Position numbers and translations under genes: made by a program. This document shows positions 11,800 through 63,810 of a stretch of DNA of 64,000 nucleotides, in pieces. The notes under the pieces are model-generated. The model saw nothing but the letters and a program-made list of their open reading frames with translations. It was not told the origin of the DNA and made no database searches. Every line of letters begins with the position of its first letter. Position 1 is the first letter of the stretch. Location: positions 383,764 to 447,763 of IMG/VR virus record IMGVR_UViG_3300009545_000018; one strand, given 5' to 3'.

Positions 11800-14700
11800 T
11801 TAACCTATTGTAGTAATGACATCTGAAGTATTTCTTGCATAAAGCTGTCCGCCACTAGCATAGACAATAACACCACTAACAGGAGATGCTGATGGTGCTG
11901 TCGTTGCATTTCCGATATAAACAACTCCATCTCCAGAGTTTGTTGGCATTTGAGTGGAAGTTACTGCAGTGGTGCGAGCTAAGCCTATAACCATTCCGCT
12001 ACTTGGATTAACTATTTGAATGCCAATATTAGATCCTCTTTGTATTTTAACATCACCATCAGCACTGGTTCCAACTCCAGATTTAATAATAATATTGCCA
12101 CCAGTTCTTGTTCCGCTGGCACCACTAGATGCACCAGCAGCAAGGGTAAGAATGCCACCAGTACCACCAGCTAATGTGGTAGCCTGTGCTGTAATTGACA
12201 TTGCAGCACCATCAGCCGCTGGTTGGTTAGCTTGATTTATAACTGCAGATGTTTGTGAGGCGTCCCATTGAAATGTGCTTGTTAGTATTGTAATTTGAGA
12301 TCCAATTCTAAATACATCAGATCCATTTGATAAACATCTAATTGAATTAGCTCCTGAAGGACCTGAAATAACAGTGTTAATAGTGCTATTACCTACAATA
12401 ACAGCATCGCCATTATTAAGTTCTATCATTTTGGCATCAGCCCCTACTGTAGTTCTACCATAAATGCCTTGTGCATTTGATAATCTAATTGCACCAGTAG
12501 TTGCTGGAGAAGATCCAAAAGTAATATAATCTGCTGTGCCAGTAGTCCATTGCGCCACAATAGTGTTACCTTTTTGAATAGTAACATAACCATCAGCACT
12601 AGCACCAGTACCAGAACGTATGGTGATATTACCACCAGTACGAGTTCCTGATCCTCCTGTAGCGTCACCTCCACGAAAAGTTGCTGCACCACCAACAACT
12701 GTTGTTGTTCCGCTACCATCTTGAGCCGCAAATAATGTGGACTGACAAGTGACTGTATTAGAAGCATCGGTTTCTTGCTGATATCTTGGGCTAGCAACAC
12801 TTGATTTGTGTTGTATTTTTGGAGCATAAGATGTTACATCTGTACCAACAGTAAATTTTAAAGTACCACTTGCAAGAATTGAAATTGTAGATAATCCATG
12901 TATAGATGTTGAAAAAGAATCATCACCTATATTTAAGGTATCTGTAGTGGTATTTCCCCAATCAATAATTAAAGAATTATTACTATTAGTACTATTTCTT
13001 CCATAAATAGTAGTTCCATGAGCTAAACGAATAGTTCCAGTATTAGATGGATTAGTGCCAACTTTAAGACCTATTGAGTTTGTAGTAACAATAGTTTGTG
13101 AGCCAAAATCTGGATTTATTTTTGTACCAGCAATAGCAGCAGCGGCATCAACGTTAATATCTTTAATAAAATCAGTAGTTAGTGATGTGCCAGTTCTTAA
13201 GAAAACATATCCATCAGTACCCGCAACAATGTCAACAACATTTGCAGTTGCATTAGTTGGATTACCAACAACTGATAATGCTGCAGATTGTCTAAATTTA
13301 GATCCGCTAACAACATTAGATGCAATTGTTGTTGCATTACTTCCAGCAGGAGCGGTTACATCACCAGTTAATGCAGATCTCTGTAACCCTCCAGCTCCAG
13401 TAAATTCTATTCCACCACCAATAGTTATTTCTTCAATTGGACCAGTTCCAGCAGTATCTCTACCTAATATTCTATCTGTAGTAATATCAGCAAGCTTACT
13501 AATAGCAATAGCAGCCGAAGCATTAATGTCAGAATTTATAATTACACCCGCGGCAATAGCTGTTGTATTAGAGCCTGCAGAAGCAGTAATGTCTCCAGTT
13601 AAAGCTGCCCTCTGTAAAGAGCCCGAACCAGTCATACTTAAAGTTGCATTTAATGTAATATTTTCTATATTGCCAGTACCTGCAGTATCTCTACCTAATA
13701 AGCTATCAGTAGCTATAGTTTGCATTTTAGCAAATGTTACAACATTATTAGCTATAGTGGGATTAGGATAAGTACCAGTTAAATCTCCTCCGGCTGCTCC
13801 ACCAGGTATAGCTACATCCCAAGTAGGATTATTTCCAGTAGAATGTGTAGTTAACACATAACCATCAGTATTTGCGGCTAATCTAACCCAATTACTTCCA
13901 TTAAAATATAGTATATCACCCTGTTGTTGTCCAGAAATAGTTAAATCTGTTACTGTGGGGTTTGGATAAGTTCCTGAAAGATTACCACCAGCTGGACCAA
14001 TAGGTACAGCCCCACCATTGACTAATCCCCAAGTAGGATTATTTCCAGTAGAATGTGTAATTAAAGCATAACCATCAGTACCAGGAGGTAATTGTACCCA
14101 ATTAGTGCCATTAAAATATAGTACAGATCCTTGAGTTTCTCCAGTAATAGTTAAATCTGTTACAATAGATGTAGTTGATCCTGCTGTTATAGTTACATCA
14201 CCACTAATAGCTGATCTTTGTAGTCCACCAGAACCTGTAAATTCTAATCCTCCAGATACGGAAATTGTCTCTAAAGTTCCAGTACCCGCAGTATCTCTAC
14301 CCAATAAACTATCAGTAGTTATAGTGGCTAATTTAGTAAAACTAATATTAGCATTACTATCAATGTATCCATCTACAATTTTAGAAAAGAAATTGGAATA
14401 ACCATCACTTACATATGCTGTATTAACTAATCCTGTTGGTATGCTTCCAGAACCACCCATTGGTATCCATGATGAAGTACCCACTCCATCTTTACTTAAA
14501 ACATATCCATTTGGAACACTGCTTAAATTGCCAATCATGTTGGCGCCATACACATTTAAAGTAGATATTAAATTAGTTTGTGTAGTATTAAAATAAGCAG
14601 CTTGACCACCAATATGAATATTAACAACCACACCAGCAATATTTAATACATCGTTTTCAATAATACTTAAATCATTTAAATAAAAATTAAAATTACCACC

Positions 14701-15471
14701 AGCCACGTTTTCAAATGGAGCATATCCAAGACTTTTTTCTATTCTAGCATATCCATCCATAGTAATATTGCCAGAAGGAGAACTAATTAATGGTGCTGTA
14801 GCAGAGTTTAATGTTCTAAATATAGCATTGTTTAACTTAATATCTGTTGAAACAAATGGCAAACTAGCTATTATATTTGGAGTAGATGTTGCAGCTCCCA
14901 ATACTCTTAGATTTCTAAATTCATAAGAGTTTCTTAAAACTGCACCTTCTGGTAATTGCATAGAAGGTAATATAGATGTATCTCCAGCATAACCTTGAAT
15001 AATAGTATTTTTACTTAAATTCCATGTGCCAGCTGGAATACTAGCTGGTGAAGATAATGAATCATCAATAACAATAGTGGCTAATCCATTTACAGCATTT
15101 CTTGCAGCCATTAATAATGACCAAGAGGTATAAATATTTCCAGTAGCAACACCTGCTGGTTTATAAATAAAAACTTGTCCACCTTGAGGACCAGTTGGAC
15201 CAGTAGGTCCGGTTGGACCAGTAGGTCCAGCAGGTCCTGTTAGTCCTGCAGGTCCTGTAGGTCCTGTTGGACCTGTTGGTCCTGTAATTCCATTTGCTCC
15301 ATTAGTACCATTAGTTCCAGGTGTGCCTGGAGCCCCAGGAGGTCCAACAGGACCTGTTGGTCCCGTTGGTCCAGTGGGTCCAACACCACCTCCACCACCA
15401 CCACCACATCCTCCTGGATCTACTGTTGGTAAAGAATCTGGATCATCATATGCATTAGGATATTTAGTCAT
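11800..15471 (-). CDS. Collagen-like long fibre protein
   Basis: GPT triplet run near N-terminus; the same [10 protein letters not shown] and [16 protein letters not shown] repeats as ORF 7866; starts MTKYP. Confidence 0.75.
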
Positions 15472-49291: not shown

Positions 49292-49904
49292 AATATAATG
49301 TCATAGGATGCTGTCAAAGGGAGCAAAGTGTTAGAAAGTGGGAGGGTGTGGGAAGATAGCTGAATTAATGTCTTTTAATGTTTTGGCTGTCATTTGGGGT
49401 GGAATAGGATAGAAAGAGAAGATAAGTTATACTTTGATTTAGAAGGTTTAAGGAGGAAAGTAAGATTTTGGATTGGTTTGAACTGTATTATAGAGCTTAT
49501 AGATGGTTTGATGTGTTTAAAATAGCTGTAGACCGGGTCCCCAGCCGCCTCGGACCGTCAAACTCCCCACCTTTTCACTGCTGCTACAATACAGGGTTTG
49601 GCATACTCTCTGCATTATTCAATTAACATACCAATTATTCTTTTATAAGTCTTATTAATTAATTATACTTACATTACAATCATTTAATAAACATTATTAA
49701 TCATTTATGGCATCTTTCTTGCTTTCGCTGTTATTTTGCCTCACTGAACAGCTTTTCAGCCCTTTTAGTAGTCTTGGTACAGTAACTGCAAGATGCAAAG
49801 CCTATACCATGCCATAGCAGTCATTCCAGTTACACTGCACTTACCCATCTTTTAACGGTTAGTACCTGATTAATGTAGCGGGTAGCTGAGATAAGGAGAT
49901 TACT

Positions 49905-50096
49905 ATGGCACAATTCAAGATTTTGTCTCAAGTCAATGGTTCTTGGTTGGAGCAGGGGAAAGATCTCGGCGGTACTACTGTTATGAATCAAGCTGCTCAA
50001 TTGGAAAAGCAGGGATTGAATGTTCGAGTTTTCCGAACTGATATTCCCAAGTTCATTTATGAAACGGGAGCAGGATACCACGGAATCTGGTACTGA
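49905..50096 (+). CDS. First small gene of the motif block
   Basis: AAGGAG SD; follows motif 49844; ends before a terminator. Confidence 0.75.
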   Translation: MAQFKILSQVNGSWLEQGKDLGGTTVMNQAAQLEKQGLNVRVFRTDIPKFIYETGAGYHGIWY

Positions 50097-50102
50097 AAGA
50101 AT

Positions 50103-50130
50103 AAAGGAGCCTAAGGCTCCTTTTCTTTTT
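50103..50130 (+). terminator. Intrinsic terminator
   Basis: AAAGGAGCC-TAA-GGCTCCTTT with T tract. Confidence 0.85.
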
Positions 50131-50244
50131 ATCTTTGTGGTATAGGATTTGCTTATTGCAATTAATATACCAAGACTTTTTAGATAAAAGAGCTCTACCC
50201 ATCCTATAACGGAATCAAAGCAGCTATTGTAAGGTAGGTATCAT

Positions 50245-50616
50245 ATGGAATTCACCTATGAGAATGATGAAGGGGAAGACATTACAGTCACCTTCCCTAG
50301 TGTTAAGGTAGTTTGCCCAAGGTGTAAAGGGCACGGAACCCACCTTCACAATGATATTGGTAGCTATGCTTACAGCGTAGAAGAATTCCAAGATTCCTTT
50401 GATGAAGAAGAACAGGCAGAGTATTTTCGCCATGGTGGAAGATATGACGTTCTCTGCGAACGCTGTCACGGTAAAAACGTGGTGGATGAGATTGACGAAG
50501 AGAAGTGTCAGCAGGATCCGGCTTTGACAGAAGCCTGGCAAGCTTTTTGTCAGAAAGAAAAGGATGATGCTGATTATGAAAGACTCTGTGAATCAGAGCG
50601 GCGCTTTGGTTGCTGA
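50245..50616 (+). CDS. Acidic protein with CxxCxGxG Zn finger
   Basis: CPRCKGHG...CERCHGK. Confidence 0.75.
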   Translation: MEFTYENDEGEDITVTFPSVKVVCPRCKGHGTHLHNDIGSYAYSVEEFQDSFDEEEQAEYFRHGGRYDVLCERCHGKNVVDEIDEEKCQQDPALTEAWQAFCQKEKDDADYERLCESERRFGC

Positions 50617-50653
50617 TTGAGATCCCATCCTATAACGGATTACTGCTAATAGT

Positions 50654-53199
50654 ATGACAACCCTGCAGAATCTCAAGAAGCGTGACTTGTCTTTTGCTTA
50701 CCAGATTGCAGTGGCAGACTGGAAAAAACTTTCTGCTATGTGTTCTGGGCAGTCAGCTGACGATCTGGCTAATGGCTTTCATGGTAAGTCATTGGCTGGA
50801 GTGCTGTTTGATTCGGAATTGGCAGTGGATCAGATTGCAGCTAAGCTGGATCGGTTGAATCCTTAAGGGATTGAAAGGGAGGTTTACCTCCCTTTCTTTT
50901 TAATTGATGCTGGTATGCCGTTTGCATATTGCAATGTTCGAGCCAACCGTCATAAAGTTTGCTTTAAACTTGTTCCCATCTGATAACGGATAGATCCTAA
51001 TAGTATAGTTTTTCTGAGGGTTCTGACTAAAAGTAAAACCCTCCCCCTTTACGTTGCAAACAGTAACTGTAGTAGGCAATAAGCTTCCAGTTATATTGTA
51101 ACAAAGTTTGGCGGTATCTTAAAACCGCCACATTTTTTAATCCCATCATTTAACGGAAAGGTCTAAGTAATATGAATACTCTTTTTAAGTTGGTTGTTGT
51201 GATGTTGGCATTGTTTGCCGTGACTTTCTTGATTCAAACCTATGCCAATTCTTGGTTTCATCAAGTGGCATTCACGGCTCCTATCATTGGAACCATGAGC
51301 TATGCAGCTTGTACCATTGTGGCAGTAGGTTGTGTGTTGCTGTCAAAGCTGCATTGGGGCAAGTAATGTTAGGTTTCGTGGTGTTTTGCCTGGTAGGTTT
51401 TTTTACTGGGCATTGGGTAGTGGGTGGTATTATTGGAATTGTAGTATACGCCCTAAATAAGTAACTCCCATCAATAAACGGTTGAATGTTATTGATATGA
51501 CATATCATCCCAGTTACCGAGCAGTAGATTCTGTTGGTACTGAATGTGAAACTTTTGAACATGAGTATCAAGCGGTAGACTATTGGACTGGTGCTCCTAC
51601 TGGAATTGATATTCAATATTGGAATGGTTCTGAATGGGAAGAATATAATCCTAGGACTTTCACTAAAGATTAATTCCCATCAATTAACGGATTGTACCTA
51701 GTTATTGAGATGCAAAACCTAAAAGACCGATTGGAAAAGTTAGCAGATTCTTTTAAGGGTACTACCAATTCTTTTGGTAGGTTTACCGTCACCAATGTAG
51801 GTTGCGGGATTCTGAGAGTTGATGGTGAAGGTGTGCAGTATACTCCCGATGTAATATTGGGTTTTCTCAATCGACACGGCATTAAGTAATTCCCATCAAT
51901 AAACGGATTAGATCTATTAGAAAGGATAAAAAAGATGAAAGCATTCAATTGTTATATTGTCAAGCGCAAGGGCAAAGTCATCAAGGGTGAGAGTCGCAAG
52001 CTGCGCAATGCAGCCAAGCGACAACGTCAAGGTCGCTAAACCAAAAGAATGAGAGCTTAATTGTTCTCATTCTTTTTTAATTGGTCTTGGCATATGCTTT
52101 GCAACTTGCAATAAGCTTGCCAGGCGTTATATTTTTATATCCCATCTATTAACGGAAAGACATACTAAGTGGAGGCTGGTAATGTTCATTAAGATTAAAG
52201 CTTTGTTCAAGCTGTATGATCTGGGAATCATTAGCAGCGAACGTTTATCCGAAGCCTTGGTAAAGCTCTCCCCATCTGATAACGGATAAAGATTATTAAT
52301 TATGAATACTCTAGAATTCAGCCGAGCTTGCCGAACAGAGTTTGCTGCTTTGCCGGAAGCCTATCGTAATGACGATGTCTTGGAATTCTGGTTTGAGGGT
52401 GGGCTTTGGTATTGCCGCCCCAAACTATCAGAAGTAACAATTCTAGGAAACTGGGAATGTTATTATAGTGATGGTGTATGGGAGAATCAAGAAGCCCATC
52501 TTTAAACGGATGATAGGAGTCTAATATGAAAGCCAGGACTCAGTATCTGATTAATGTTTATGTCACGTTGAATAGTGCTGGTCGTAAGGATCAATTCCGC
52601 CGGGGTCGTTACAATGACCCGGAACACTCTGCCATAGCTTGGGGTGGGGTTCATGGTCCTCTTTTGGGCTGCGAACCTTCCGCTGAGGAATTGCAAGAAT
52701 TGGTAACAGAGGGTTACATTACAGTTAAGTCCAATGGCGCTGTAACTCCTACAGCTAAAGCTAAGGCGGCTAGGACTGGAAGCTTAGGCAGTATTAGTCC
52801 TTAATACCAATGAATAGTTTAGAGCCTAAAGAGACAGAAGATCAACGCAGAGCCCGATTAGCATCAAGAGAAGATCTAGCGTGTTTAGAGTGCCACCATA
52901 GGGTTTGCTTATACTTTTGCTCTAAGAGAGTTAAAAAGCGTCCCATCAAGTAACGGATTAGTGTATCTAATATGAAGTACCTAGATGAAAAGTCTGTTAC
53001 TGCAGTGCGTCGAACTAAGCCTCTAGCAGTTAGGACTAGGTCAGGATATGGGAGTAAACTTCCAACTGATATTATGCTGCAATTGAATAAGCGTTGGTAT
53101 CGGGTCTATGTGATGATCTATTCTAATGCTGGTTCGGCATATATCTTGCAAAAGGGAGAAAAGGTTTTGCTTGGGTCCTATGATCCTCAACCCATCTAA
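50654..53199 (+). CDS. Small motif-associated genes: 50654-50866, 51172-51366, 51366-51464, 51497-51673, 51710-51889, 51935-52039, 52182-52289, 52302-52505, 52526-52804, 52810-52953, 52972-53199
   Basis: Each starts just after a motif or is coupled to the previous gene; products unknown (two are hydrophobic). Confidence 0.65.
50873..50901 (+). terminator. Intrinsic terminator
   Basis: GAAAGGGAGG/CCTCCCTTTC with T tract. Confidence 0.85.
51005..51138 (+). ncRNA. Candidate small structured RNA
   Basis: ORF-free unit between motif 50975 and a terminator; stems GAGGGTT/AACCCTC, GTTGCAA/TTGTAAC, TAACTG/CAGTTA. Confidence 0.5.
51109..51138 (+). terminator. Intrinsic terminator
   Basis: TGGCGGT/ACCGCCA with T tract. 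Confidence 0.75.
52043..52078 (+). terminator. Intrinsic terminator
   Basis: AAAAGAATGAGAGC/GTTCTCATTCTTTT. Confidence 0.8.
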
Positions 53200-53210
53200 T
53201 AACGGATTCC

Positions 53211-53241
53211 AGGGGAGCTGTAATGGCTCCCTTTTCTTTTT
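53211..53241 (+). terminator. Intrinsic terminator
   Basis: GGGAGCT/GGCTCCC with T tract. Confidence 0.8.
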
Positions 53242-53330
53242 GGTGGGGTGGCAAGGCTTTTGCATATTGCAAGGCTCGTGCCACGCCCCAATAACAACCC
53301 ATCTATTAACGGATTAATAGGTATTATGTA

Positions 53331-53446
53331 TCCGATTGGTTGGCACCTTTTTAGTTAGTAGTGAAACATAATTCATTAGCTTTCACTGGCAATTAATGAA
53401 TTATGTTCTGACTAAAACTAAGGTTCGATTCCTTAGAGTCGGGCTA
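53331..53446 (+). ncRNA. tRNA-like RNA with greatly extended central arm
   Basis: CCGATT/AGTCGG acceptor-like stem, TAAGG-TTCGATT-CCTTA T-arm, long central stem. Confidence 0.55.
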
Positions 53447-53479
53447 ATTCCCATCTAATAACGGTAGAATATAATTAAT

Positions 53480-56400
53480 ATGAATCGCACTAAGCAAAAC
53501 CTAGATTCTGCTAAGATGCTGGTTGCTAAAGCTCTGGCTATTCTGGCGCAAGCTGGTTTGGCTCAACGATAGAGAAGACAATGAAAAAGCCCAATCAAGA
53601 ATTGTTTCGGCTGCTTCGTTTTGCCATTCGTTTTCCAGGCTGGCACTCTTACGATTCCAGTGTAGCTAAACATATCAAAAGGGCAGCTGCATTGGAATTT
53701 CTGGAAGTTGATACCAAAACCAAACAATTCCGATTGATGCCAAGTCAATGGGCGGAAGACTTTCGCAAAGGTCCCATCGTTTAACGGTTGAGGGTATCTA
53801 ATATGAATCTCAATAAAAGAATCAAGCTGGATCGTTCCTTCGAACTAGCAGAAGATTCTGCTAAGCCTGATATTACTGGAACCATTGTGGGCTTGGGACA
53901 TATTGTCGGCATAACAGTTTATATCGTGGAACTGGATCAAGGTTTCTATTCGCCAGATAGGCGAATCTATATTAGCAGAATGGTAGTAGCAAGGGAAAGC
54001 CTTCGTCCCATCGAATAACGGGTGAAGGTAACTAACTGGGGACTGAAACCCGAGCTGACCGAAAGGAAAAGCTCCATATAGTATTACTGGATGAGATCCT
54101 AATCCGGGTTGTAAAAGAATAACGGTTGGTACCGTTTACAATCATGTCGAAAGACCTTAGGCTGGCGAAGTAAGTCCCCATCATTTAACGGCGGAAGATT
54201 AATAACATGAGGAAAAACGCTCAAAAGGTTCTGCAAGCTTTCAATGCTGGGCAGGCTGCTAATGAGAAAACCATTAGCACCAATGGTAAGGAATTGTTTT
54301 CCTACGCCATGTTGATCGCCCGCAAGAATGGCGATAAGGTAGAGCTTATCGATTATAGTAAAGCTCCCAGCAACACTACCCGCAGTCAGGTTAACGCAGT
54401 GCGGCAATTCTTTCCTGCTAGTCAGATTGTGGTAGTGGAGAGTTTCTAAAAACAAGTTTTCCTAAAACTTGTTCCCATCCTTTAACGGAATAAGGCTCTT
54501 ACCATGAGAGTTGGTCCTGCTACACTATCCTACTTGAAACGTTTGGGCGATGAGGAAGCTGCTTTGATGTTGAAAGCCGGTTCATTGGTTTTCAGTCAAG
54601 CTCAAAAAGCAGGTTTGACGCCGGGTTTCTTTTTCATTCAAGGGCAACTGAGAATGGTGCCAGTACCCAAAACCTTTGCAGTGAGTCCCATCTTCTAACG
54701 GAAGGATCCTTCTAATATGGAAGAGTTAATGGATCGAGCCCGGGAATGGGTCAATGAGAATTATCCTCACTTGGAAGGCGATGACTATTCCGCCAAGCTA
54801 GAAGAGACACTATGGGATCTGGCGGAGATTGATGGCACGGATCCTATTAACTATCTGACTTATTATAATTAATTACACTAAAGCAATAATTGAGGTTTAA
54901 TGATTCGAGCCCCGCCGAGCTAGGCGTCTCTAATGTTTAATAATAGTTGATTGAATTTATAAGATTACAGTTTGAGAGGAATGGGGAGAAGGCGACCTTC
55001 TCCCCATTCCAATGTTATACATTGGTATAGGCTTTGCATCTTGCAATCCTTATACCAACCTTGCTATTATCTTTCCCATCCAATAACGGAAGCATTCAAT
55101 TAGATATGACAATTAGTTATCACAAGCGAGACTTGCAACATGCCCAAAAGATTGCAGAAGCAGAAAAGTACCATATCCTGAGTTTCAGTGACGGTGCAAA
55201 CTCCGCGGAGCATCTAGTTCGGGTAGTAGAACTGGAAAACGATCTTCGTCGTATCTCTCAACAATTGAATCCCATCAAGTAACGGCTAGAGACATAATAT
55301 AAGAAACATGGCAAAGTCAAACAAGTACTGTAGGGATTGTGAGTGTTATCATCCGGCAGGCGATTGTAATGGTAATGATCGTCGGCAAGATCATAAGAAG
55401 CGAGAAAAGGTCAAGCAAGCCGAAAGCCCCATGTTCTTCTATGATCAAGATCCAATGTTGATGGATCCATAAAAACCTGTTCCCATCTGATAACAGTTAA
55501 TGTAAGTGGTTGTATCATTGAACGCGGCGTAAAAGACTATAATTAATAAGGTTCACGCGGGAAAAAGATAGTCTTTCCACTTTTCCATCTAATAACGGCT
55601 CCTAGATACTAATTGAAAGAATAAAGACAATGTTTTATGTAACCAAGAATGACGCGCAATACATCATGGCTGCCCTGCTGATTCCGACCCTGCTGGGCTT
55701 TTACTCTCTCTGCCTTTACTTCTAAAAACTTAATAGGCAGTTTAGAATAGCTGCCTATCTTTCTTCCGGTTTAGCTCAGTTGGCAGGGAAACATTAATGA
55801 CAGCTAATTGGTTGCATAATGTTTCCCATCCATTAACGGTTGAAGGTGTCTAATATGACTTGGAATAAAGAACAGATTAGGATTGCCATTCAAACCCGTG
55901 ATGTTGTGGTAGAGCGTGCCATTGTTGCTATCTATCAACGTCAGACACTAGACGAACAATCCTCAGAAGAAACCAAGCATTCTAATGGAGTTGGTTTTAG
56001 TGGGGCGCATGCACGTTTGGGCACGTATTATGCCAAGTGGATTCTTCAGGGACGTCACTTAACCGGAAACCATCTAGTCAAAGCTCGTGCCATGGCATTG
56101 CATTACGTAGGACAATTAGAGCAGATTGCTGCACAAGTTTAATTCAAACTTGTTCCCATCTATTAACGGATTGATATTACTAATATGGATTACCTAACTC
56201 GTAACATTCAAGACACTGGTAGCAAAACGGTTTTGATGCCAGCCAGCCACGTTCGTGGGAGCACCATTATCTTTTGGACTTGCTGTGTGTTCTGGACCAT
56301 TGCCGCCATTGCTTATCACAGCATGCACTGAACCAAGATGCATATCTTCCTGTTAGTCATTATGGCATACTGTCATGTCTCCTGGGAATCTACCGATAGG

Positions 56401-57052
56401 GGACAGCCTGTTTATGATGCTAACGGGTATAACTACAGTGACAATGTTATCTCCTGTCATATCGATCCCATTGAGGATAATATAACAGAACAACGTCACC
56501 ATATTACTTGCTGGGGCACTGATAAGCAGGTAGTGGTAGATCGGTCCTTGCATTGTGATAAGCAGCAGATTGAAGATTACATTGAAGTGCAAAGCTTATT
56601 CTTAGGCTGTAAGTATCACTGAATGTTAGGCATTATTCTTGCCGCTGTAATTCCGATAGTAATACCAGTTATTATTAATTGTTTGGATTACTTCATAGAT
56701 TAAATCCCATCTGATAACGGAGAAGGGTTTGTAGGCATTATCAAGAGGGAATTTATATTACTGAACATTCCAATATGTTGGAGTTGATTAATCGTTGCAA
56801 TAAGCTTGCAACCTTACAGACAACTATTACATGGATGTATGTAGTTGTCTGAGTTTATAACGGCACTGTAATGGTGCCGTTTCTTTTATGCGCGTGTTGG
56901 TACGTGCTTTGCATATTGCAATAAGCTTGCCAACCATCCGTCAAGCCAAATTATTATCCCATCTAATAACGGAAGGATACACGTAAATGAAGCTAAAGTT
57001 AATAGGTCAAGGTACACACACTCGTAAGGGTGCCGCAATCTATGGCGACTAA
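53480..57052 (+). CDS. Small motif-associated genes: 53480-53572, 53581-53784, 53803-54018, 54207-54449, 54504-54698, 54717-54872, 55106-55282, 55308-55472, 55630-55725, 55855-56142, 56185-56331, 56338-56622, 56987-57052
   Basis: Starts re-assigned to the ATG about 15 nt after each motif where present; products unknown. Confidence 0.65.
54037..54180 (+). ncRNA. Candidate multi-stem structured RNA
   Basis: Closing stem TGGGGACT/AGTCCCCA, GAAA tetraloops, several nested stems. Confidence 0.6.
54978..55010. terminator. 15-bp perfect hairpin without a U tract
   Basis: GGAATGGGGAGAAGG-CGA-CCTTCTCCCCATTCC. Confidence 0.6.
56736..56887 (+). ncRNA. Candidate small structured RNA
   Basis: ORF-poor unit after motif 56706; GTTGCAA/TTGCAAC and CAGACAACTA/TAGTTGTCTG hairpins, then a terminator. 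Confidence 0.4.
56859..56887 (+). terminator. Intrinsic terminator
   Basis: AACGGCAC/GTGCCGTT with T tract. Confidence 0.8.
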
Positions 57053-57149
57053 TCCACATAGGTTGTTCTGATTAGAGAATAGCTTTAAAAGCTCCGAACA
57101 CTTTAGCTTCCCATCCTATAACGGTTTCATACTCTGATTGAGATACACA

Positions 57150-57518
57150 ATGAAGATCGAATGTACCACTGAGGAATTGGTAGCGCTGCAACGTACCACG
57201 GAACTGGAATCCTTGCAATATGAAGTAGTAGCATTGCGAGAACGGAATTCTTCCCTGGAAGATCGGATCGCTAACCTGAAGGATCACAACACTGACCTAC
57301 AGCGGGAATTGGTGAAGCCGGCAGCTACTATTAATGGCGCCAGTATGCAGCAAGTTTCGGATCTGTTCAAGGTATACTTGGGTGGTGCCAATAGGGAAAC
57401 CCCTATTGGAGCCCAAAAGATCGCTGCTATCAAAGCCGTTCGTGAAGTTTTCAAGTGCGGATTAAGGGAAGCCAAGTTTATCATTGAAGGTAACTTGGAA
57501 AACGAGCGATACGGCTGA
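57150..57518 (+). CDS. Coiled-coil protein with ribosomal protein bL12 (L7/L12) C-terminal-like domain
   Basis: KIAAIKAVREVFKCGLREAKFIIE matches the bL12 KIxxIKxVRxxxGxGLKEAKxxVE signature. Confidence 0.7.
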   Translation: MKIECTTEELVALQRTTELESLQYEVVALRERNSSLEDRIANLKDHNTDLQRELVKPAATINGASMQQVSDLFKVYLGGANRETPIGAQKIAAIKAVREVFKCGLREAKFIIEGNLENERYG

Positions 57519-57556
57519 ATAAACTTCCCATCCTTTAACGGTTGATTGCATTCAAT

Positions 57557-60500
57557 ATGGATCCTGAGCAATTGATTCAGCAAAGCGCGGCTTCTGGGGA
57601 AACCATCAAGATTGATTGGAATGTCAAAGTGTTTTCTCACTTGATGCGCCGGTCTCCTATTTACACCGAATATACAACCTTCACGGAATTCCAGGGTAAA
57701 GAATTGGATAAGTCCTGGTGTATCCAATTGATACATTAACCCATCCTTTAACGGTTAGAGACACCTAACATGACATTCGATAAAGGACAGCGAGTCAACA
57801 CTCCTAATGGTCTTGGTACTATTAATTACCAAAGGATGGTACCGCCCGATTACAGTGAAGCTATGATAGTTTCTGTCTTTCTGGATTCTCGCCAATTGGA
57901 TCGGGACTTGGGAAAGTATTCTGGAACTATCTTTCCGGCAGATGTTGTTACTCCCATCCAATAACGGACTACTAATAATAGTATAAGACAAATGGTAAAA
58001 ACCAACCACCATAACGAATGGTTTCGACCCGTTACCAAAACCACTTGCTCTTGCGGTCAAAAGAAAACGCAAGTTTATAGTTGGGGAGAATATGTGTGTG
58101 CCAAGTGGCGCACCATTGACTATGTGTGTCAAAACTGTTTTCCGATTGTAAGCGAACGTTTACAGCAGCATAAAAAGGAATGCGGCTGTGAATTTAAGCT
58201 AATTGGTTATCGCGGCTGTAGTTTGCCTGACTGGCTTAAAATGCCTGTGCAATCTTGCCAGTTTTCCCATCAAGTAACGGTTGAAGATGTCTAATATGAC
58301 TAAGCAACAAGCTCTGCAGGACTTTAAAGAAAACGTACTGCCGGCAGTCAAACAGCAATATCCACATGATAAGCATGCTGTTATTCAAGCTTGGAATGAT
58401 TACACTGACAGCTTGTGTAAAGACCGGCAGATTACCGCCAAGCAATACCATAACTGGTCCAATCCTTTTTGAGCCTCATGTCTAAGTGTGAACATGTATT
58501 TCCACGTGTAGCTAATTACGAGTTATTAGGCACTGGTGGCAAAAGGATTATATGGTCCTGCAATAACTGTCTTTCCATCAAGGTTCACTTCATTAATGAT
58601 GTAAAAGTTAATGATAAATGGACTACATATGAAAAAACAGTCATAGTAGACTGTTTAGATTACGATCCTGATCCCATCCAGTAACGGTTAGGTACAACCA
58701 ATATGACAACTATGTATCTAATACGCGATACCACTGGCAAGATATTGTCGAGTTGCTCTTTCAATTCCGTTGCAGCTTTATGTGAAGCAGTTAAGGTCTG
58801 GCATTATTTGGGCAACATTAGCGCCGATAGCTATGGTGTTGTAGTTATCTTTTAGTTCCCATCCTATAACGGCTAGGTACAATTAATATGAGCCAGTTAT
58901 CCGAAGCCCTAAAAAAAGTCGCTGCTATTGCATCTTCTACCTACCTAGGAGAAGAGACTGAAAAGTATAGTCAAGGCAGCGGTACTTACAAGGTTAATAA
59001 GTGGAAAGTAGAATTGTCTTTCCAGGGGCGCCGATATACTTGTCCCTTATATAAGACAGGTGAAGGTCTTCGAAAGAAAAAGTACAGCTTTAATAGCAAG
59101 CTGGGACAATGGGGTAATTTTCCCGTTGCAGGATCAAACCACCCTGATGTAGCTGACGTTATTCATTGTCTGATTACTGATACTCATTGCGGCATGATGG
59201 CATTCGACGAGTATTGCAGCGAGTTTGGACTTGATACTGATTCCCGTGCTGCTTTCAAAGTGTGGGAGCAATGCGTGGAAACTGCTGGACCTTTTAGACG
59301 GTTTCTAGGTTCGGAGTTTGATCATCTGTCAATGTTGGAACACTAATGAAAACTTACAGGCTCAAAGAAAACCATCCCACCTATCAGAAATTTCTTAAGC
59401 TATATAATCTAGCTGAGAAGTTAGGTATCTCTCTTGAATTTATTGGAGATCAATGTTTTTTGGTAGATTTTGATCTGCCTAAGATACGGTTTCAAGTGAA
59501 AGATATAGAGCCTAATCATATCTTAACTTCGTTTCCTTATCCAACGGAATTTGAGATTACATATCAGAAGCCCCATCCATAGACGGAAGTGTGTATTTAA
59601 TATGCGCAACTATCAAAGCATGATTGAGCGACGAAAAGCGGAATTCCAAGATCATTTCTCGGATGTTGGATTGTCCAAACAGTTCATTCAATATTACGAG
59701 AATGGCAAGCGTATCAAGGTGCGGTTTCCCGATGGTCGTACAGAGTGCGGTACCGTTGGAGTTACAACCGGTTGGGTCCCTTGCTTTCTGCTAATGCATC
59801 GCAGTACTGATACTGGAAGCTCTACAGTCTTGGCAGACATGGATAAGATTGTGGGCGTGCAAGTCAGTAAGAAGTACGTTACGCCGTGAATGGAAAAGGA
59901 GCATCTGCTCCTTTTCATTTTGCCCAATATGGTATGTGCTTTGCATATTGCAGCATTCGTACCACTACCTCCGGGGCAAAAAACAAACTCCCATCACATA
60001 ACGGGTTGATACTAAAGGTAAGAGATATGAAAGTTAAAGTGTTTCCCGTCAATGGCAGCTATACTATCTGTGCGGTTTTACCTAACGGCAGCATGGATCC
60101 GCATTATCCTGCTATTACGGATATTGCGCATCATGGTAATGCGCAATACATTGCGGACAGAATCAATGAGGCTTATCGGGCGGGTGAAACCAATAAAGCC
60201 ATTGAGATTCGAAAAGTCTTGGGTCTTTTATATTAATCCCATCTTCTAACGGATGAATGCAATTAATATGGCAAAACAATATCCCTGTGATGGTTTTACT
60301 CGACTCACAGAAGAATCAGACTTGGTTCCAGGTACCGTGCTTCGCATGGTTAACTTTATCGATAACCCTGCTGTTAGCGCTCCCTTTTCCGATTGTGTCA
60401 TTACTAAAGTAGAAGATGGTATTGTCTACCTGAATCGTCCCATGGGATGGTCCAATGGCAAAACTCATACAGAAGAGTTTTGTGCCTACACTACCAGGGT

Positions 60501-62428
60501 TGTCAAGTTCTGGCATACTGTACTGACCGCTAGTGGTAAGCCTTATAGTATGTTTGGGGTGTAGTTCCCATCCTGTAACGGAACCAGTATATTAATTATG
60601 GATAGATTTACAAGGTGTCTGCTACTAGGTCTATTCTTCTTTGTTCTAAACGTTCTTTTATATAAGATGTTTAGGTTGGTTTATTGGGAACGTACAGTCA
60701 TTACCTCTATAGTAGCACTTTATGTCGGTTGGTTTCATGGCAGTTGGTTTTTCAAAAAAAGAAATAAACCCATCCAGTAACGGATATTATCTTCCTATTG
60801 TAAGAAAGTAAAAGACAATGGAAATTCTTTCTCATTCTCGCAGTGTTAAGGTAGAACAATACAGCTTGTGTTTCGATTATATCGGAGCCAGCAAGCATCA
60901 TGGTTTCTCGTTTGACTGCAATGCAGCTGGAGAAGTAGATGTTGTGGCTTTGCAGAAAAAGCCGGCAGCATATGATAACTATCTGAAATGTCTGTCAGGC
61001 GAGCATAAGGTTCATGCTCCTTACGTTCAGGACTTTTCGCATCGTTATACCGAGCCGGCAGTAGGTCGGTGTGTCTGCGGCTGCAAAGTAGAATTGGCTC
61101 GTTTTACCAATACCTGCGATGGTTGCAATCGGGATTACAATTACAGCGGAGATCTTTTGGCACATAGAAGCCAATGGGGTGAGGAAACTGGGGAAAGCTA
61201 CTGTGATATTCAGGACCTGTAATGAAAAAGCGCAATCGCTGTAAGTGTAAAAAGTGTGGTACGATTATTGAATCCAAACATCGGCATGACTTTGTTTACT
61301 GTAGATGTAAGTCCATTTTCACTGATGGTGGAACTGATTACATTAGAAGGGGAGGAGATCTTTCTTTAATTGAGGAAGTTCCAGAAGATAACAACATCTC
61401 CTAACGGAATATATTATGAGTTACGAACTAAGCTTCAGTGAAACATTCTTCTTCGGCGAATGTGATCCCTACGAAACTGACATTACTGCAACACCTACCA
61501 GTGTGTATGCTGCTATCTGCTGCTGTAAGGAACTGGATCCTGACAAGTGGCAAGACATTGCAGCGGAAGTCTTTCAAGTAGAGCCGGATCTATTGACAGA
61601 GGAAGCTGTCATGAGAAAGATTCGTAAAACCGACACATGTTCTAACTTGAACGTGCCTGTACGGGTGTGGATAGATGAACAGGGTTGGTATAAACTAGAA
61701 GTGTATTGATCCCATCTGATAACGGTGGAGCATATCTAATATGAAGATTACAGCAGATCGTTTCAGTGAGCTATCTCTTTCGATTCAAGATCAAGCCACT
61801 AGTCTTTACAATAAGGCTTTTCGTTTGGGCTTTAATGCCGAGCTTGGCGCTAAAGATGGTGGCACTGAAACTGTCATTAGCATGATTACGGAACTGGAAT
61901 CTACCTTGCGGGTATTGAAACGACGCCTGCAGGAAACCCTCCCATCCTCTAACGGGTAGAGATACTTATTATGCAAGCCAGTCTTTGTGATTCAGATTGC
62001 AGTGAAAATGCTGTCATAGCAATCCTTCAAGGTGAAGGTGCTGCTAAGTTTGCCAAAGAGACATGTCAATCGCTCAATGGTAGCAACTGGGAATGTGATG
62101 GCAATGATTTTGCCTATTGTCTCACGGAAAACTGTCCAAGCTTATTGGAAGAATTCCAAAAAGACTTGGGCGATATTGAGATAAACGATTCTGAGTATAC
62201 TCCCATCACATAACGGATAATAAATATAATATGTTAACTCAAAAGGGAATGGAAATTCTGTTGAAGATGTATTCTCTACATCGCAGCAATTTCTTAGAAA
62301 CTCATGATGGTTGCAATCGGAATGATTGCGAGCGGGATTTTCTCCATAACATTCTGTCGAAAGTTTCCGGTAGTTATAACGAAATTGTCTATGCCAAGTT
62401 AGCTAACGAGATTGAAAGCATTCGATGA
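57557..62428 (+). CDS. Small motif-associated genes: 57557-57739, 57770-57964, 57992-58294, 58296-58472, ~58478-58684, 58703-58855, 58888-59346, 59346-59582, 59602-59889, 60027-60236, 60268-60564, 60598-60780, 60818-61222, 61222-61404, 61416-61709, 61741-61959, 61971-62213, 62231-62428
   Basis: Same unit architecture; several are Cys-rich Zn-binding peptides (57992, 60818, 61222). Confidence 0.7.
59893..59921 (+). terminator. Intrinsic terminator
   Basis: GAAAAGGAGC/GCTCCTTTTC then ATTTT. Confidence 0.75.
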
Positions 62429-62823
62429 AAGCTGTACTACTAGGATTGTTACTGTTAGGTTGCGGAGATCATGATAATCCTCCTCCGGAAGCCCCTAAGT
62501 TTTGCATTCAACCCGCCGCCACTTATGTAGAAAGTTTTAGTCCGGTCTATGGTAGTTGTCCAGGTTTACCATCAGTTTTGATTACCATTCCGGAAGATGG
62601 AAGTTTTCCAATCAATACGGATGAAACCTGTCATGTTAAGGTAGATGGTTGCAAGGCAGACAATACTGGGTGCGTGTATCAGAGTGACGGCTGCACTATC
62701 AAGTCTGATACCACTGTCACCTTTAAGGATGATGGTACTGCAGTAGGCTATATGACAGTATCGACAGCTAAGTGTGGATACGACTGTATGGGTATCTATG
62801 AGTTGTACTTAGTTAAGCAATAA
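62425..62823 (+). CDS. Cys-rich lipoprotein
   Basis: MKAVLLGLLLLG-C lipobox. Confidence 0.75.
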   Translation: MKAVLLGLLLLGCGDHDNPPPEAPKFCIQPAATYVESFSPVYGSCPGLPSVLITIPEDGSFPINTDETCHVKVDGCKADNTGCVYQSDGCTIKSDTTVTFKDDGTAVGYMTVSTAKCGYDCMGIYELYLVKQ

Positions 62824-62825
62824 CT

Positions 62826-63776
62826 ATGGAACTGGTAAAGTTAGGCGCTAAGCAAGGCACAGAATGCTGTACCTGTAGAAACAGGATTAAGCATAACGAG
62901 ATCTGTTATCGAAAACAACGCTTAGCCGAAACTTATCACGAACGATTACATGCTAACGGTAAAGGCATGGTTCAATGGTACCATCACAAGTCATGCATTG
63001 AAAAAATTCCCATCTGATAACGGATACCTACGAGTAATATGAGTAGCAAATGCACAGTTAAGAAAGCCAAAGAGTTGAATGCCTATGACATTAAATTCAA
63101 GCTAACGCAGGGAGAATTAATTGCATTGTACAATGCATTAAAACGATATTCCTCTGCTTCTACTGGAGGCGCGGCTGTACACGCTTATCTGTGTAATAGT
63201 TTGCAAGAGCTGTCTGTGGAACATGGCGTCAAGTTTCCCATCGACTAACGGAAGAGCTTATTTAATATGCTAAGTATGAAGGTAGAGACGGTTGTTAACG
63301 CACTAGTTACTCAATTGCTGTCAACGGATCTATATAATGAAGCAATTCATTTCCACTTGGATTGCCGGCTCAATTACTTTGAGGATGGCAAGCGTAATTA
63401 TCGAACGGCACGCGCCTTGCATTTGCTATATCAGCGTCATACGGGAAGCACCTATATCAGTGCCTTTTCTGCTGTCTTGGATAATCCATTCGATAAGATT
63501 GATAAGGTCAAAGATTGGAATCATGAATGCACTCATGACTACTGCTGGCGTAGTGTAAACTGTTTCTCTGCCGTCTATTTTTCTATGGCAGAAGATATTA
63601 ATCGTCAGTTGGTAAAAGCTGGATTGTCGGAAGTAGCACCCATTGATATGAGAGAGTTTAACTCTTTTGGTGGCATTAGCGGAAATGTTTTCCAATTGGT
63701 TCCAGTCAAGGTAGAACTGGATCCTACAGACAAGAATCATCATAGAAGGATGATAACAGTTTCTCCCATCCTTTAA
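62826..63776 (+). CDS. Three small genes (62826-63017, 63039-63248, 63267-63776)
   Basis: All end inside the next motif (IPI, FPID, SPIL). Confidence 0.7.
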
Positions 63777-63810
63777 CGGAATAGTGCTTAGATTATTACC
63801 AGGAAAGTAA

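What the first reader, a model, noticed from the sequence alone, without database searches (positions are those of the whole stretch)
52810..63776. The motif supplies the stop codon of the upstream gene (proteins ending P-I-x-stop)
Seen: 14 unrelated ORFs run into the motif in frame and end there: RPIK (52953), QPI (53199), GPIV (53784), RPIE (54018), SPIF (54698), NPIK (55282), TPIQ (57964), DPIQ (58684), KPIQ (60780), NIS (61404, degenerate copy), TPIT (62213), IPI (63017), FPID (63248), SPIL (63776). About nine others stop 0-2 nt before it. Established: integron cassette ORFs often end within the attC boundary. Inference: genes may be captured or exchanged as motif-to-motif modules, possibly through RNA intermediates, since units match apparent transcripts. 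Strong compaction against a promoter is the simpler alternative.
Basis: partly seen in the sequence, partly recalled or inferred. Interest (0 to 1): 0.75.

Follow-up and report, generated by a model that had tools for sequence, protein, structure and literature searches.

The report
Gene-start motif doubling as stop codon
In the tightly packed early region of an uncultured 448-kb soil phage, every small gene is preceded by the same 15-base signal, and because that signal contains TAA, upstream genes that reach it in one reading frame end there; this looks like a side effect of packing, but the signal also marks where related phages swap genes.

Summary
All 14 listed ORFs end at the TAA (or a stop in N3) of T-CCCATC-NNN-TAACGG.

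The motif:
- 79 exact copies, all on the + strand.
- Confined to one early region: genome 433.6 kb, across the record ends, to 76 kb.
- About 30 metagenome contigs carry the identical motif.

The stop-codon use looks incidental:
- TAACGG is invariant in the 57 copies not used as a stop.
- ORFs stopping in the motif number 22 of 60, about the one third that random phase gives.
- Homologues elsewhere end with other residues, or read the motif in another frame.
- The motif appears to travel with the downstream gene, usually 15 nt before ATG. It also precedes two tRNA genes.

Best reading: a clade-specific gene-start signal, probably a promoter (not shown), against which genes are packed.

The cassette idea is partly supported. 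Gene order is scrambled among relatives, and homology blocks break at the motif (14 of 44 ends; 8% expected). This resembles T4 PeSL shuffling. No integrase or reverse transcriptase was found, and no read evidence for circles.

Side findings:
- Sigma54-like palindromic promoters head the early operons.
- Terminase relatives carry the bare hexamer CCCATC at extreme strand skew.

The parts
49844..63779 (+). Array of 45 copies of T-CCCATC-NNN-TAACGG. It continues past the record end to genome 76,021. Typically 15 nt separate the motif from the next ATG.
52810..52953 (+). ORF (47 aa) ending RPIK at the motif TAA
52972..53199 (+). ORF (75 aa) ending QPI at a TAA in N3. This motif copy is followed 5 nt later by a terminator hairpin (53211-53233), not by a gene.
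53581..53784 (+). ORF (67 aa) ending GPIV. It has a homologue in L039 in a different neighbourhood.
53803..54018 (+). ORF (71 aa) ending RPIE. Its homologue in L028 ends ...QPI at a stop in N3.
54504..54698 (+). ORF (64 aa) ending SPIF
55106..55282 (+). ORF (58 aa) ending NPIK. Its homologue in L039 stops 1 nt before its motif.
57770..57964 (+). ORF (64 aa) ending TPIQ. Its homologue in L030 reads the motif in frame 1 (...LPSDNG).
58478..58684 (+). ORF (68 aa) ending DPIQ
60598..60780 (+). ORF (60 aa) ending KPIQ
61222..61404 (+). ORF (60 aa) ending NIS at the TAA of a degenerate motif copy
61971..62213 (+). ORF (80 aa) ending TPIT
62826..63017 (+). ORF (63 aa) ending IPI at a TGA in N3
63039..63248 (+). 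ORF (69 aa) ending FPID
63267..63776 (+). ORF (169 aa) ending SPIL. Homologues P0002 and P0003 have nearly the same length but end ...VEVL and ...IRKEV.
49599..49809 (+). Three tandem sigma54-like (-24/-12) palindromic elements at the head of the early region, just before the first motif copy
50103..50172 (+). Composite of terminator hairpin plus sigma54-like palindrome, followed by a motif copy. Further composites lie near 50873-50945, 52050-52125, 53211-53290, 54940-55060, 56859-56935 and 59895-59965.
53313..53449 (+). Motif-to-motif unit without an ORF. It is a structured RNA candidate with a tRNA-like T-arm, and its 3' end is conserved in L039.

Best explanation
T-CCCATC-NNN-TAACGG is a strand-specific gene-start signal of the phage's early region. 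It is most probably a promoter (or a start-site-proximal element) read by a machinery specific to this phage clade. It belongs to the gene downstream of it.

The early region has almost no spacer: [gene][motif][about 15 nt with a purine-rich ribosome site][ATG]. The TAA inside TAACGG is an invariant part of the signal. An upstream ORF that arrives in phase 0 therefore cannot pass it and ends Pro-Ile-x-stop. ORFs in the other phases place their own stop 0-2 nt before the motif, or read through to stops at +16 or +26. The PIx tails are translated signal, not protein features.

Because the same 15-mer sits at every gene boundary, it is also where homology between related phages breaks. Units of motif plus gene get reshuffled, as at T4 PeSL elements.

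Shown: the anatomy, the conservation, the incidental nature of the tails, and the boundary association. Inferred: promoter activity and recombination within the motif.
For: 1. Distribution. 79 exact copies, none on the reverse strand, only in genome 433.6 kb to the record end plus 1 to 76 kb. Spacing grows from about 0.3 kb to 19 kb, and distal copies head operons of up to 10 genes.
2. Position. ATG lies exactly 15 nt after the motif in 28 of 66 cases. Upstream of T(-1) nothing is conserved.
3. Not tied to translation. The motif also precedes tRNA-Leu genes (12015 to 12053; 76021 to 76113). At 15177 it follows a strong terminator with no other promoter-like element.
4. Conservation independent of stop use. 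TAACGG is invariant in the 57 of 79 copies not used as a stop. In relative G001 all 12 copies are intact while most ORFs stop before them.
5. Tails are incidental. SPIL here against KEV or L in homologues from a phage without the motif. The TPIQ gene's homologue reads the motif in frame 1, and the NPIK gene's homologue stops before the motif.
6. Ownership by the downstream gene. The G000/L039 homology block starts 1 nt before the motif. Paralogues at 439618 and 11612 share N3 = CAT.
7. Breadth. About 30 metagenome contigs, 41-56% GC, carry the identical motif.
8. Boundaries. 14 of 44 internal homology-block ends lie within 8 nt of the motif in both partners; 8% is expected, p about 7e-6. L068 and L069 are 97% identical up to the last motif base and then unrelated. 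L026 and L028 are 98% identical up to +5.
Against: - No transcription start site data exist for this phage.
- No cognate RNA polymerase was identified. The T7-like search found nothing but its control was silent. No beta-prime was found. The large unknown proteins have no Pfam or PHROG hit.
- Every sigma54-like promoter is followed 25-45 nt later by a motif copy, so the motif would also lie inside those transcripts. That equally suits an RNA-level role.
- One copy (53191) is followed directly by a terminator.
- In terminase relatives G004, G005 and G007 only the hexamer CCCATC is present. It is also enriched inside ORFs in all frames, which a simple promoter does not explain.
- In G004 a hexamer abuts the 5' end of a tRNA.
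- The boundary association could arise from selection for intact genes alone, since the motif is nearly the only intergenic DNA.
Confidence: 0.6

Rival explanations
1. RNA-level punctuation. The motif acts in polycistronic early transcripts that start at the sigma54-like promoters. It would be either a cleavage site for a sequence-specific endoribonuclease, giving gene-sized mRNAs and releasing tRNAs or small RNAs, or a binding site for a translational regulator placed at a fixed distance from AUG.
For: - Every sigma54-like promoter is followed by a motif copy within 25-45 nt, and terminators are followed by sigma54-like elements rather than by the motif alone.
- The distance from CCCATC to ATG is fixed at 24 nt here and 23 nt in G004.
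- The motif directly follows a tRNA-like RNA (53450) and flanks tRNA-Asn in G004.
- One copy sits in front of a terminator (53191).
- Five-to-seven-base specificity is typical of known sequence-specific RNases (own knowledge: T4 RegB, MazF family).
Against: - Many genes inside multi-gene units have no motif, so it is not needed per cistron.
- From genome 9 kb to 76 kb there are motif copies but no sigma54-like elements, and at 15177 the motif follows a terminator directly.
- In G001 the distance from motif to ATG varies from 16 to 57 nt.
- No candidate RNase was identified.
Confidence: 0.2
2. Dedicated mobile-cassette system. The motif would be a recombination site, like attC, at which motif-to-motif gene modules are excised and captured, possibly via RNA intermediates. 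The stop codon would be part of the cassette boundary.
For: - Gene order is scrambled among relatives.
- Homology blocks break at the motif.
- Unit order is swapped between L047 and L054.
- Fixed N3 (GCC or AAG) in some lineages could reflect homogenisation of copies.
Against: - No tyrosine recombinase and no reverse transcriptase in the complete genome, with working controls.
- The motif is not self-complementary, so it cannot form an attC-like hairpin (sequence).
- The unit that moves is motif plus downstream gene, as expected for a regulatory element.
- The right-hand breakpoint of the L068/L069 replacement lies about 60 nt inside the gene, not in the motif.
- No variant joints were seen in the one run available, though only contigs could be laid.
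Confidence: 0.1
3. DNA-level polar signal. CCCATC would be a strand-oriented oligomer needed at high density on the first-entering part of the genome, for example a Chi-like sequence (GATGGG on the other strand) that tames a host end-processing nuclease, or a signal for DNA internalisation. Intergenic placement would simply be the cheapest location.
For: - In terminase relatives the bare hexamer is the most frequent hexamer of the early region, with 60-fold strand skew: 268 vs 3, 172 vs 3 and 222 vs 6. This includes positions inside conserved ORFs in all frames.
- All copies point the same way from the head of the early region.
Against: - In this genome 80 of 88 hexamers are part of the full 15-mer at gene starts, and none is inside a long ORF.
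- The fixed distance to ATG and the invariant TAACGG half are not explained.
- Spacing grows to many kb after 15 kb.
Confidence: 0.08

Closest known systems
PeSL (promoter-early stem-loop) cassettes of T4-type phages (Arbiol et al. 2010, PMC2839356; Comeau et al. 2014, PMC4122927)
   Same: Short conserved regulatory elements are repeated between small non-essential early genes in hyperplastic regions. Insertions, deletions and replacements between related phages have their breakpoints at these elements, so genes shuffle as modules.
   Different: PeSLs are sigma70-like promoters plus a terminator stem-loop. This motif has no -35/-10 pattern and usually no stem-loop. It is a 15-mer with 12 invariant bases shared across phages of 36-56% GC, and it overlaps the upstream stop codon. 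Mini-circles were shown for PeSLs and could not be tested here.
Phage-polymerase promoters of the T7/SP6/Syn5 type, and other repeated intergenic promoter motifs such as the halovirus HF2 intergenic repeats (PMC8707807)
   Same: A contiguous, strongly conserved, co-oriented motif lies directly upstream of many genes of one temporal class, with short leaders.
   Different: No single-subunit polymerase gene was detected (the search control was silent). Transcription start sites are unknown. Density reaches one copy per roughly 300 nt.
Integron attC sites and gene cassettes
   Same: Small, mostly unknown ORFs are bounded by a repeated element, and ORFs can end within the boundary element.
   Different: There is no integrase and no palindromic hairpin-forming site. 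The element goes with the downstream gene and sits at a fixed distance from its ATG. Every unit has its own copy in the sense orientation.
Chi and other skewed polar oligomers
   Same: The core hexamer shows extreme strand bias in relatives.
   Different: In this genome the motif is confined to gene starts and extended to 15 nt.

Membership tests
Integron cassette / attC | Tyrosine recombinase (IntI) encoded with the array | tested here: not met
   PF00589 has no match in the complete 447.8-kb genome; the control rang in 14 of 14 genomes
Integron cassette / attC | Boundary element is an imperfect palindrome that folds into a hairpin | tested here: not met
   CCCATCNNNTAACGG has no self-complementarity beyond CC/GG, and no copy lies on the reverse strand (sequence)
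Integron cassette / attC | Cassette consists of the ORF plus its downstream site | tested here: not met
   Homology blocks and shared N3 tie the motif to the downstream gene. The number of informative cases is small.
T4-type PeSL | Sigma70-like early promoter | tested here: not met
   There is no conserved -35/-10 pattern around the motif. Sigma70-like sites are not above shuffles (41 vs 39.3).
T4-type PeSL | Adjacent terminator stem-loop | tested here: not met
   Only about 12 composites of terminator plus sigma54-like palindrome exist. Most motif copies have no stem-loop.
T4-type PeSL | Breakpoints of replacements between relatives lie at the element | tested here: met
   14 of 44 block ends lie within 8 nt of the motif against 8% expected; see also L068/L069 and L026/L028
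T4-type PeSL | Mini-circles formed by exchange between neighbouring elements | not testable with these tools
   Only Logan contigs of one DNA run could be laid, and they showed no joints
Single-subunit phage RNA polymerase promoter | Cognate T7-like polymerase gene in the genome | tested here: inconclusive
   PF00940 gave no match, but the control rang nowhere
Single-subunit phage RNA polymerase promoter | Contiguous conserved motif of at least 15 nt, co-oriented, directly upstream of genes | tested here: met
Single-subunit phage RNA polymerase promoter | Transcription starts within or at the end of the motif | not testable with these tools
   No RNA run holds the region
Sigma54 (-24/-12) promoter (second element only) | TGGCAC-N5-TTGCW with GG and GC 10 nt apart | tested here: met
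   TGGYAYN5YTGCW gives 14 matches in the window against 0.57 expected. All lie at operon heads, but five are mirror halves on the - strand.
Sigma54 (-24/-12) promoter (second element only) | Sigma54 and an enhancer-binding ATPase are available | tested here: not met
   Neither is encoded by the phage. The host is unknown.

The most novel reading that the evidence does not exclude
CCCATC, extended here to CCCATC-N3-TAACGG, is the recognition word of a still unidentified machinery of a large clade of uncultured 350-450-kb phages, for example a virion-delivered or early-made polymerase, or an RNA endonuclease. The same word would start or punctuate each early transcript, close the upstream reading frame, and serve as the crossover point at which early gene cassettes are exchanged. 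Together with sigma54-type palindromic promoters, that would be an early-expression programme unlike any described phage.
Probability: 0.15. Interest if true: 0.8.

Novelty: new variant of a known kind. Interest (0 to 1): 0.55.

Why it matters
As far as my searches went, this motif is undescribed. Four literature searches found no description of it, and no GenBank phage is a close relative.

It is a sharp handle on early gene expression in a widespread clade of huge soil and groundwater phages:
- It gives exact gene starts for dozens of orphan genes.
- It offers a testable promoter or processing site.
- It is a natural marker for tracing how early 'ORFan' genes are shuffled between phages.

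The stop-codon overlap itself is ordinary genome economy.

The accompanying sigma54-like palindromes, if functional, would be an unusual way for a phage to start infection.

Tried and rejected
- Rfam at E up to 0.1 on 48-64 kb: no family.
- ARAGORN on the window: no tRNA.
- Read laying on the only holder run (X1, Logan contigs): one 48.6-kb contig identical to the window, with no variants. The listed 'joint' and loose ends are motif repeats.
- Phage-encoded recognisers sought and not found: T7-like RNAP (control silent), beta-prime (19), sigma54 DNA-binding domain (24), sigma54 activator (25), integrase (83), reverse transcriptase (84).
- One small sigma70-family gene exists at genome 382573-383202, but nothing ties it to the motif.
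- Pfam and PHROGs on the largest unknown proteins and on conserved early proteins gave no useful hit.
- GenBank phages: only remote sheath hits, and no hit for the conserved early protein.
- Co-segregation of N3 with the downstream rather than the upstream gene: at identities of 57-83% it was 3 of 5 against 0 of 5. This is suggestive, not significant.
- 19 of the 51 metagenome hits are bacterial tRNA-Glu arrays that happen to contain CCCATCGTCTAACGG. They were set aside.
- Pairing of the motif with the start codon or with the 16S 3' end was considered by eye and dropped: no consistent complement.
- The sigma32 -10 element (CCCCATNT, from memory) resembles the core, but there is no -35 and no preference for C before CCCATC.
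- My crude ORF calls in the GC-rich regions of G004 are unreliable.
Full report
**What the window is.** The window is bases 383,764-447,763 of a 447,763-bp IMG/VR virus record from a rhizosphere metagenome, rated 100% complete. It encodes a tail sheath, baseplate J, large terminase, portal, DNA polymerase III alpha, ribonucleotide reductase, NAD ligase and about 38 tRNAs. No GenBank phage is close. An ORF of 508 codons runs from 447,574 across the record ends to 1,337, so the two ends are contiguous in the phage. G+C is about 30% over most of the genome. It is 40-42% from about 433 kb, through the ends, to about 15 kb.

**The motif.**
- CCCATCNNNTAACGG has 79 exact copies (85 with relaxed matching, plus a few degenerate ones). 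Every copy is on the + strand.
- All copies lie between genome 433,607 and 76,021, passing through the record ends. Spacing is about 0.1-0.5 kb at first and grows to 19 kb.
- The consensus is T-CCCATC-NNN-TAACGG-A, then a purine-rich stretch, then TAAT-ATG.
- Nothing is conserved upstream of the T.
- ATG lies exactly 15 nt after the motif in 28 of 66 cases with a downstream ORF.
- Genes inside multi-gene units lack the motif and are closely abutted.
- The motif also precedes two tRNA-Leu genes. At 15,177 it follows a strong terminator with nothing else promoter-like in between.

**The observation.** All 14 listed ORF ends are correct, and the ORFs are unrelated to each other. The 79 exact copies break down as follows:

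| Upstream ORF (35 codons or more) | Copies |
|---|---|
| Stops at the motif TAA | 18 |
| Stops at a stop codon in N3 | 4 |
| Stops 0-2 nt before the motif | 15 |
| Reads through to +16 to +26 | 5 |
| Stops 3-30 nt before the motif | 18 |
| No ORF close upstream | 19 |

In phase 0 the motif reads Pro-Ile-x-stop. The other two phases have no obligatory stop.

**Is the stop use selected?** It does not appear to be.
- ORFs stopping in the motif number 22 of 60. This does not exceed the one third expected from random phase (p=0.34).
- TAACGG is invariant in the 57 copies where it is not a stop.
- It is also invariant in relative G001, where most ORFs end a few bases before the motif.
- The 169-aa ORF ending SPIL has homologues of nearly equal length ending ...VEVL and ...IRKEV. 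One of them comes from a phage region with no motif at all.
- The homologue of the TPIQ gene in L030 runs through its motif in frame 1 and ends ...LPSDNG.
- The homologue of the NPIK gene in L039 stops 1 nt before its motif.

So the tails are translated motif.

One thing remains unexplained. In this genome the upstream ORF is in phase 0 more often than expected, 34:13:13 (p=6e-4), even when it uses its own stop. Relatives show no such bias (38:33:28). A possible reason is that phase 0 is the safest state, because loss of a stop or a late frameshift ends at the TAA within three codons.

**Whose motif is it?** The few informative cases tie it to the downstream gene.
- The block shared with L039 starts 1 nt before the motif at genome 439,034 and ends at that gene's stop. 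The gene upstream differs between the two phages.
- Paralogues at 439,618 and 11,612 share N3 = CAT.
- Over all homologous pairs, N3 co-segregation with the downstream gene is suggestive only.

**Relatives.**
- A scan for two motif copies 190-220 nt apart found a near-identical 48.6-kb contig and a distinct 118-kb phage contig, G001, with 12 copies all carrying N3 = GCC.
- The same scan of metagenomes found 51 loci. About 30 are phage-like arrays of the identical motif in soils, wetlands and groundwater, at 41-56% GC. The remaining 19 are tRNA-Glu arrays that share the 15-mer by coincidence.
- The large terminase has 225 relatives at 70% identity or more. None of 16 large relatives has the full motif.
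- G004, G005 and G007 carry the bare hexamer CCCATC at 268 vs 3, 172 vs 3 and 222 vs 6 (sense vs antisense) in GC-rich early regions. It occurs at junctions as [stop]-CCCATC-23 nt-ATG, and also inside ORFs in all frames.
- CCCATC is therefore the older core, and TAACGG is an extension in this subclade.

**Shuffling.**
- Among homologous junction pairs, excluding near-identical contigs, 79 are homologous on one side only and 3 on both sides.
- Of 44 internal ends of blastn blocks, 14 lie within 8 nt of a motif in both partners. The expectation is 8% (p about 7e-6).
- L068 and L069 are 97% identical up to the last base of a motif and unrelated after it. L026 and L028 are 98% identical up to 5 nt past a motif. 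L047 and L054 carry two units in swapped order.
- Two caveats apply. The motif is almost the only intergenic DNA, so selection for intact genes alone would favour such boundaries. And the right-hand junction of the L068/L069 replacement lies about 60 nt inside the next gene.
- The pattern matches what was described for PeSL elements of T4-type phages (PMC2839356, PMC4122927).
- No integrase or reverse transcriptase is encoded. The only run holding this DNA gave no variant joints, but only contigs could be laid.

**What the motif does.** I favour a promoter or start-site element, for these reasons:
- It is strictly co-oriented with the genes.
- It is confined to one temporal region.
- It heads operons and tRNA genes.
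- It occurs in tandem.
- It follows a terminator directly at 15,177.
- If CCCATC acts like a -10 element, 23-24 nt from CCCATC to ATG is about the shortest distance that still leaves room for a start site and a ribosome-binding site (inference).

The main rival is an RNA-level role, because a second element looks like the true operon promoter. Three copies of that second element stand in tandem at the head of the early region, and one follows each terminator. Each is a roughly 40-nt palindrome whose halves match the sigma54 -24/-12 consensus: 14 matches in the window against 0.57 expected. Each is followed 25-45 nt later by a motif copy. G001 has the same arrangement. The phage encodes neither sigma54 nor an activator.

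The hexamer skew inside ORFs of G004, G005 and G007 leaves room for a DNA-level polar function as well.

**Verdict.** The stop-codon overlap is a by-product of packing genes against a conserved gene-start signal. The cassette idea survives in the PeSL sense, meaning exchange at a conserved regulatory element. It does not survive in the integron or RNA-intermediate sense.

Noticed in passing
window 49599-49809, 50138-50172, 50911-50945, 52088-52125, 53259-53283, 55023-55057, 56898-56935, 59930-59964; genome 1636 and 8154: Roughly 40-nt palindromes TGGYAY-N5-YTGCW-N3-TGCAA-N6-7-RCCA. Both halves match the sigma54 -24/-12 consensus. Three stand in tandem at the head of the early region and one follows each terminator. 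The same arrangement is seen in G001 and in several metagenome relatives. The phage has no sigma54 or activator gene. I found no report of sigma54-type phage early promoters in the library searched.
   Followed up: partly
G004 (L154-L160), G005 (L179-L181), G007 (L177-L178): In terminase relatives (about 76-79% identity) the bare hexamer CCCATC is the commonest hexamer of the GC-rich early region, with about 60-fold strand skew. This includes positions inside conserved ORFs in all frames. The full 15-mer is absent.
   Followed up: partly
window about 49300 to the end, continuing to genome about 15 kb: G+C steps from about 30% to 40-42% in the early region. In G004 the step is from 34% to 50-60%. 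Early genes may be tuned to a GC-richer host before the phage's own roughly 38 tRNAs are made.
   Followed up: no
genome 212,881-213,035 (L011 12881-13035); G004 L154 15230-15303: tRNAs with anticodon CTA (amber suppressors) are present. TAG ends only 11 of 299 long ORFs. Some genes may be recoded at TAG late in infection. I did not test this and used the standard code throughout.
   Followed up: no
window 53313-53449 and 54022-54176; also 55762-55800: Motif-bounded units without ORFs. One has a long hairpin and a tRNA-like T-arm whose 3' end, followed by the motif, is conserved in L039. A fragment resembling a tRNA D-arm lies after the terminator at 55733. No Rfam or ARAGORN hit.
   Followed up: partly
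immediately upstream of the motif copies at window 50975, 54474 and 56155 (55482 ends in only a truncated version): A small shared hairpin (AACAAGTTT...AAACTTGTT) sits between the upstream stop codon and the motif.
   Followed up: no
window 64000 / genome 447,763: Three assemblies (this record, IMG/VR contig G002 and the Logan contig of run X1) all break at the same base. The break lies inside an ORF that spans the record ends and starts with a lipoprotein-like signal followed by Gly/Ser-rich sequence. It is probably an assembly break at a repeat or a variable stretch.
   Followed up: partly
L055, L038, L034 and 16 other metagenome loci: Bacterial tRNA-Glu(UUC) gene arrays contain CCCATCGTCTAACGG as their acceptor-stem and D-arm segment. 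The last motif copy of the phage (genome 76,021) has this same N3. Probably coincidence.
   Followed up: partly
genome 439618, 11612, 28747; and 12403, 15401, 21746: Two three-member paralogue families lie within the early region, each copy behind its own motif. The conserved 196-aa early protein at genome 18943 is found in at least 8 relatives.
   Followed up: partly
window 59572-59586: A further degenerate motif copy (CCCATCCATAGACGG). Here a 78-aa ORF ends at a TAG that overlaps the motif in another frame.
   Followed up: partly
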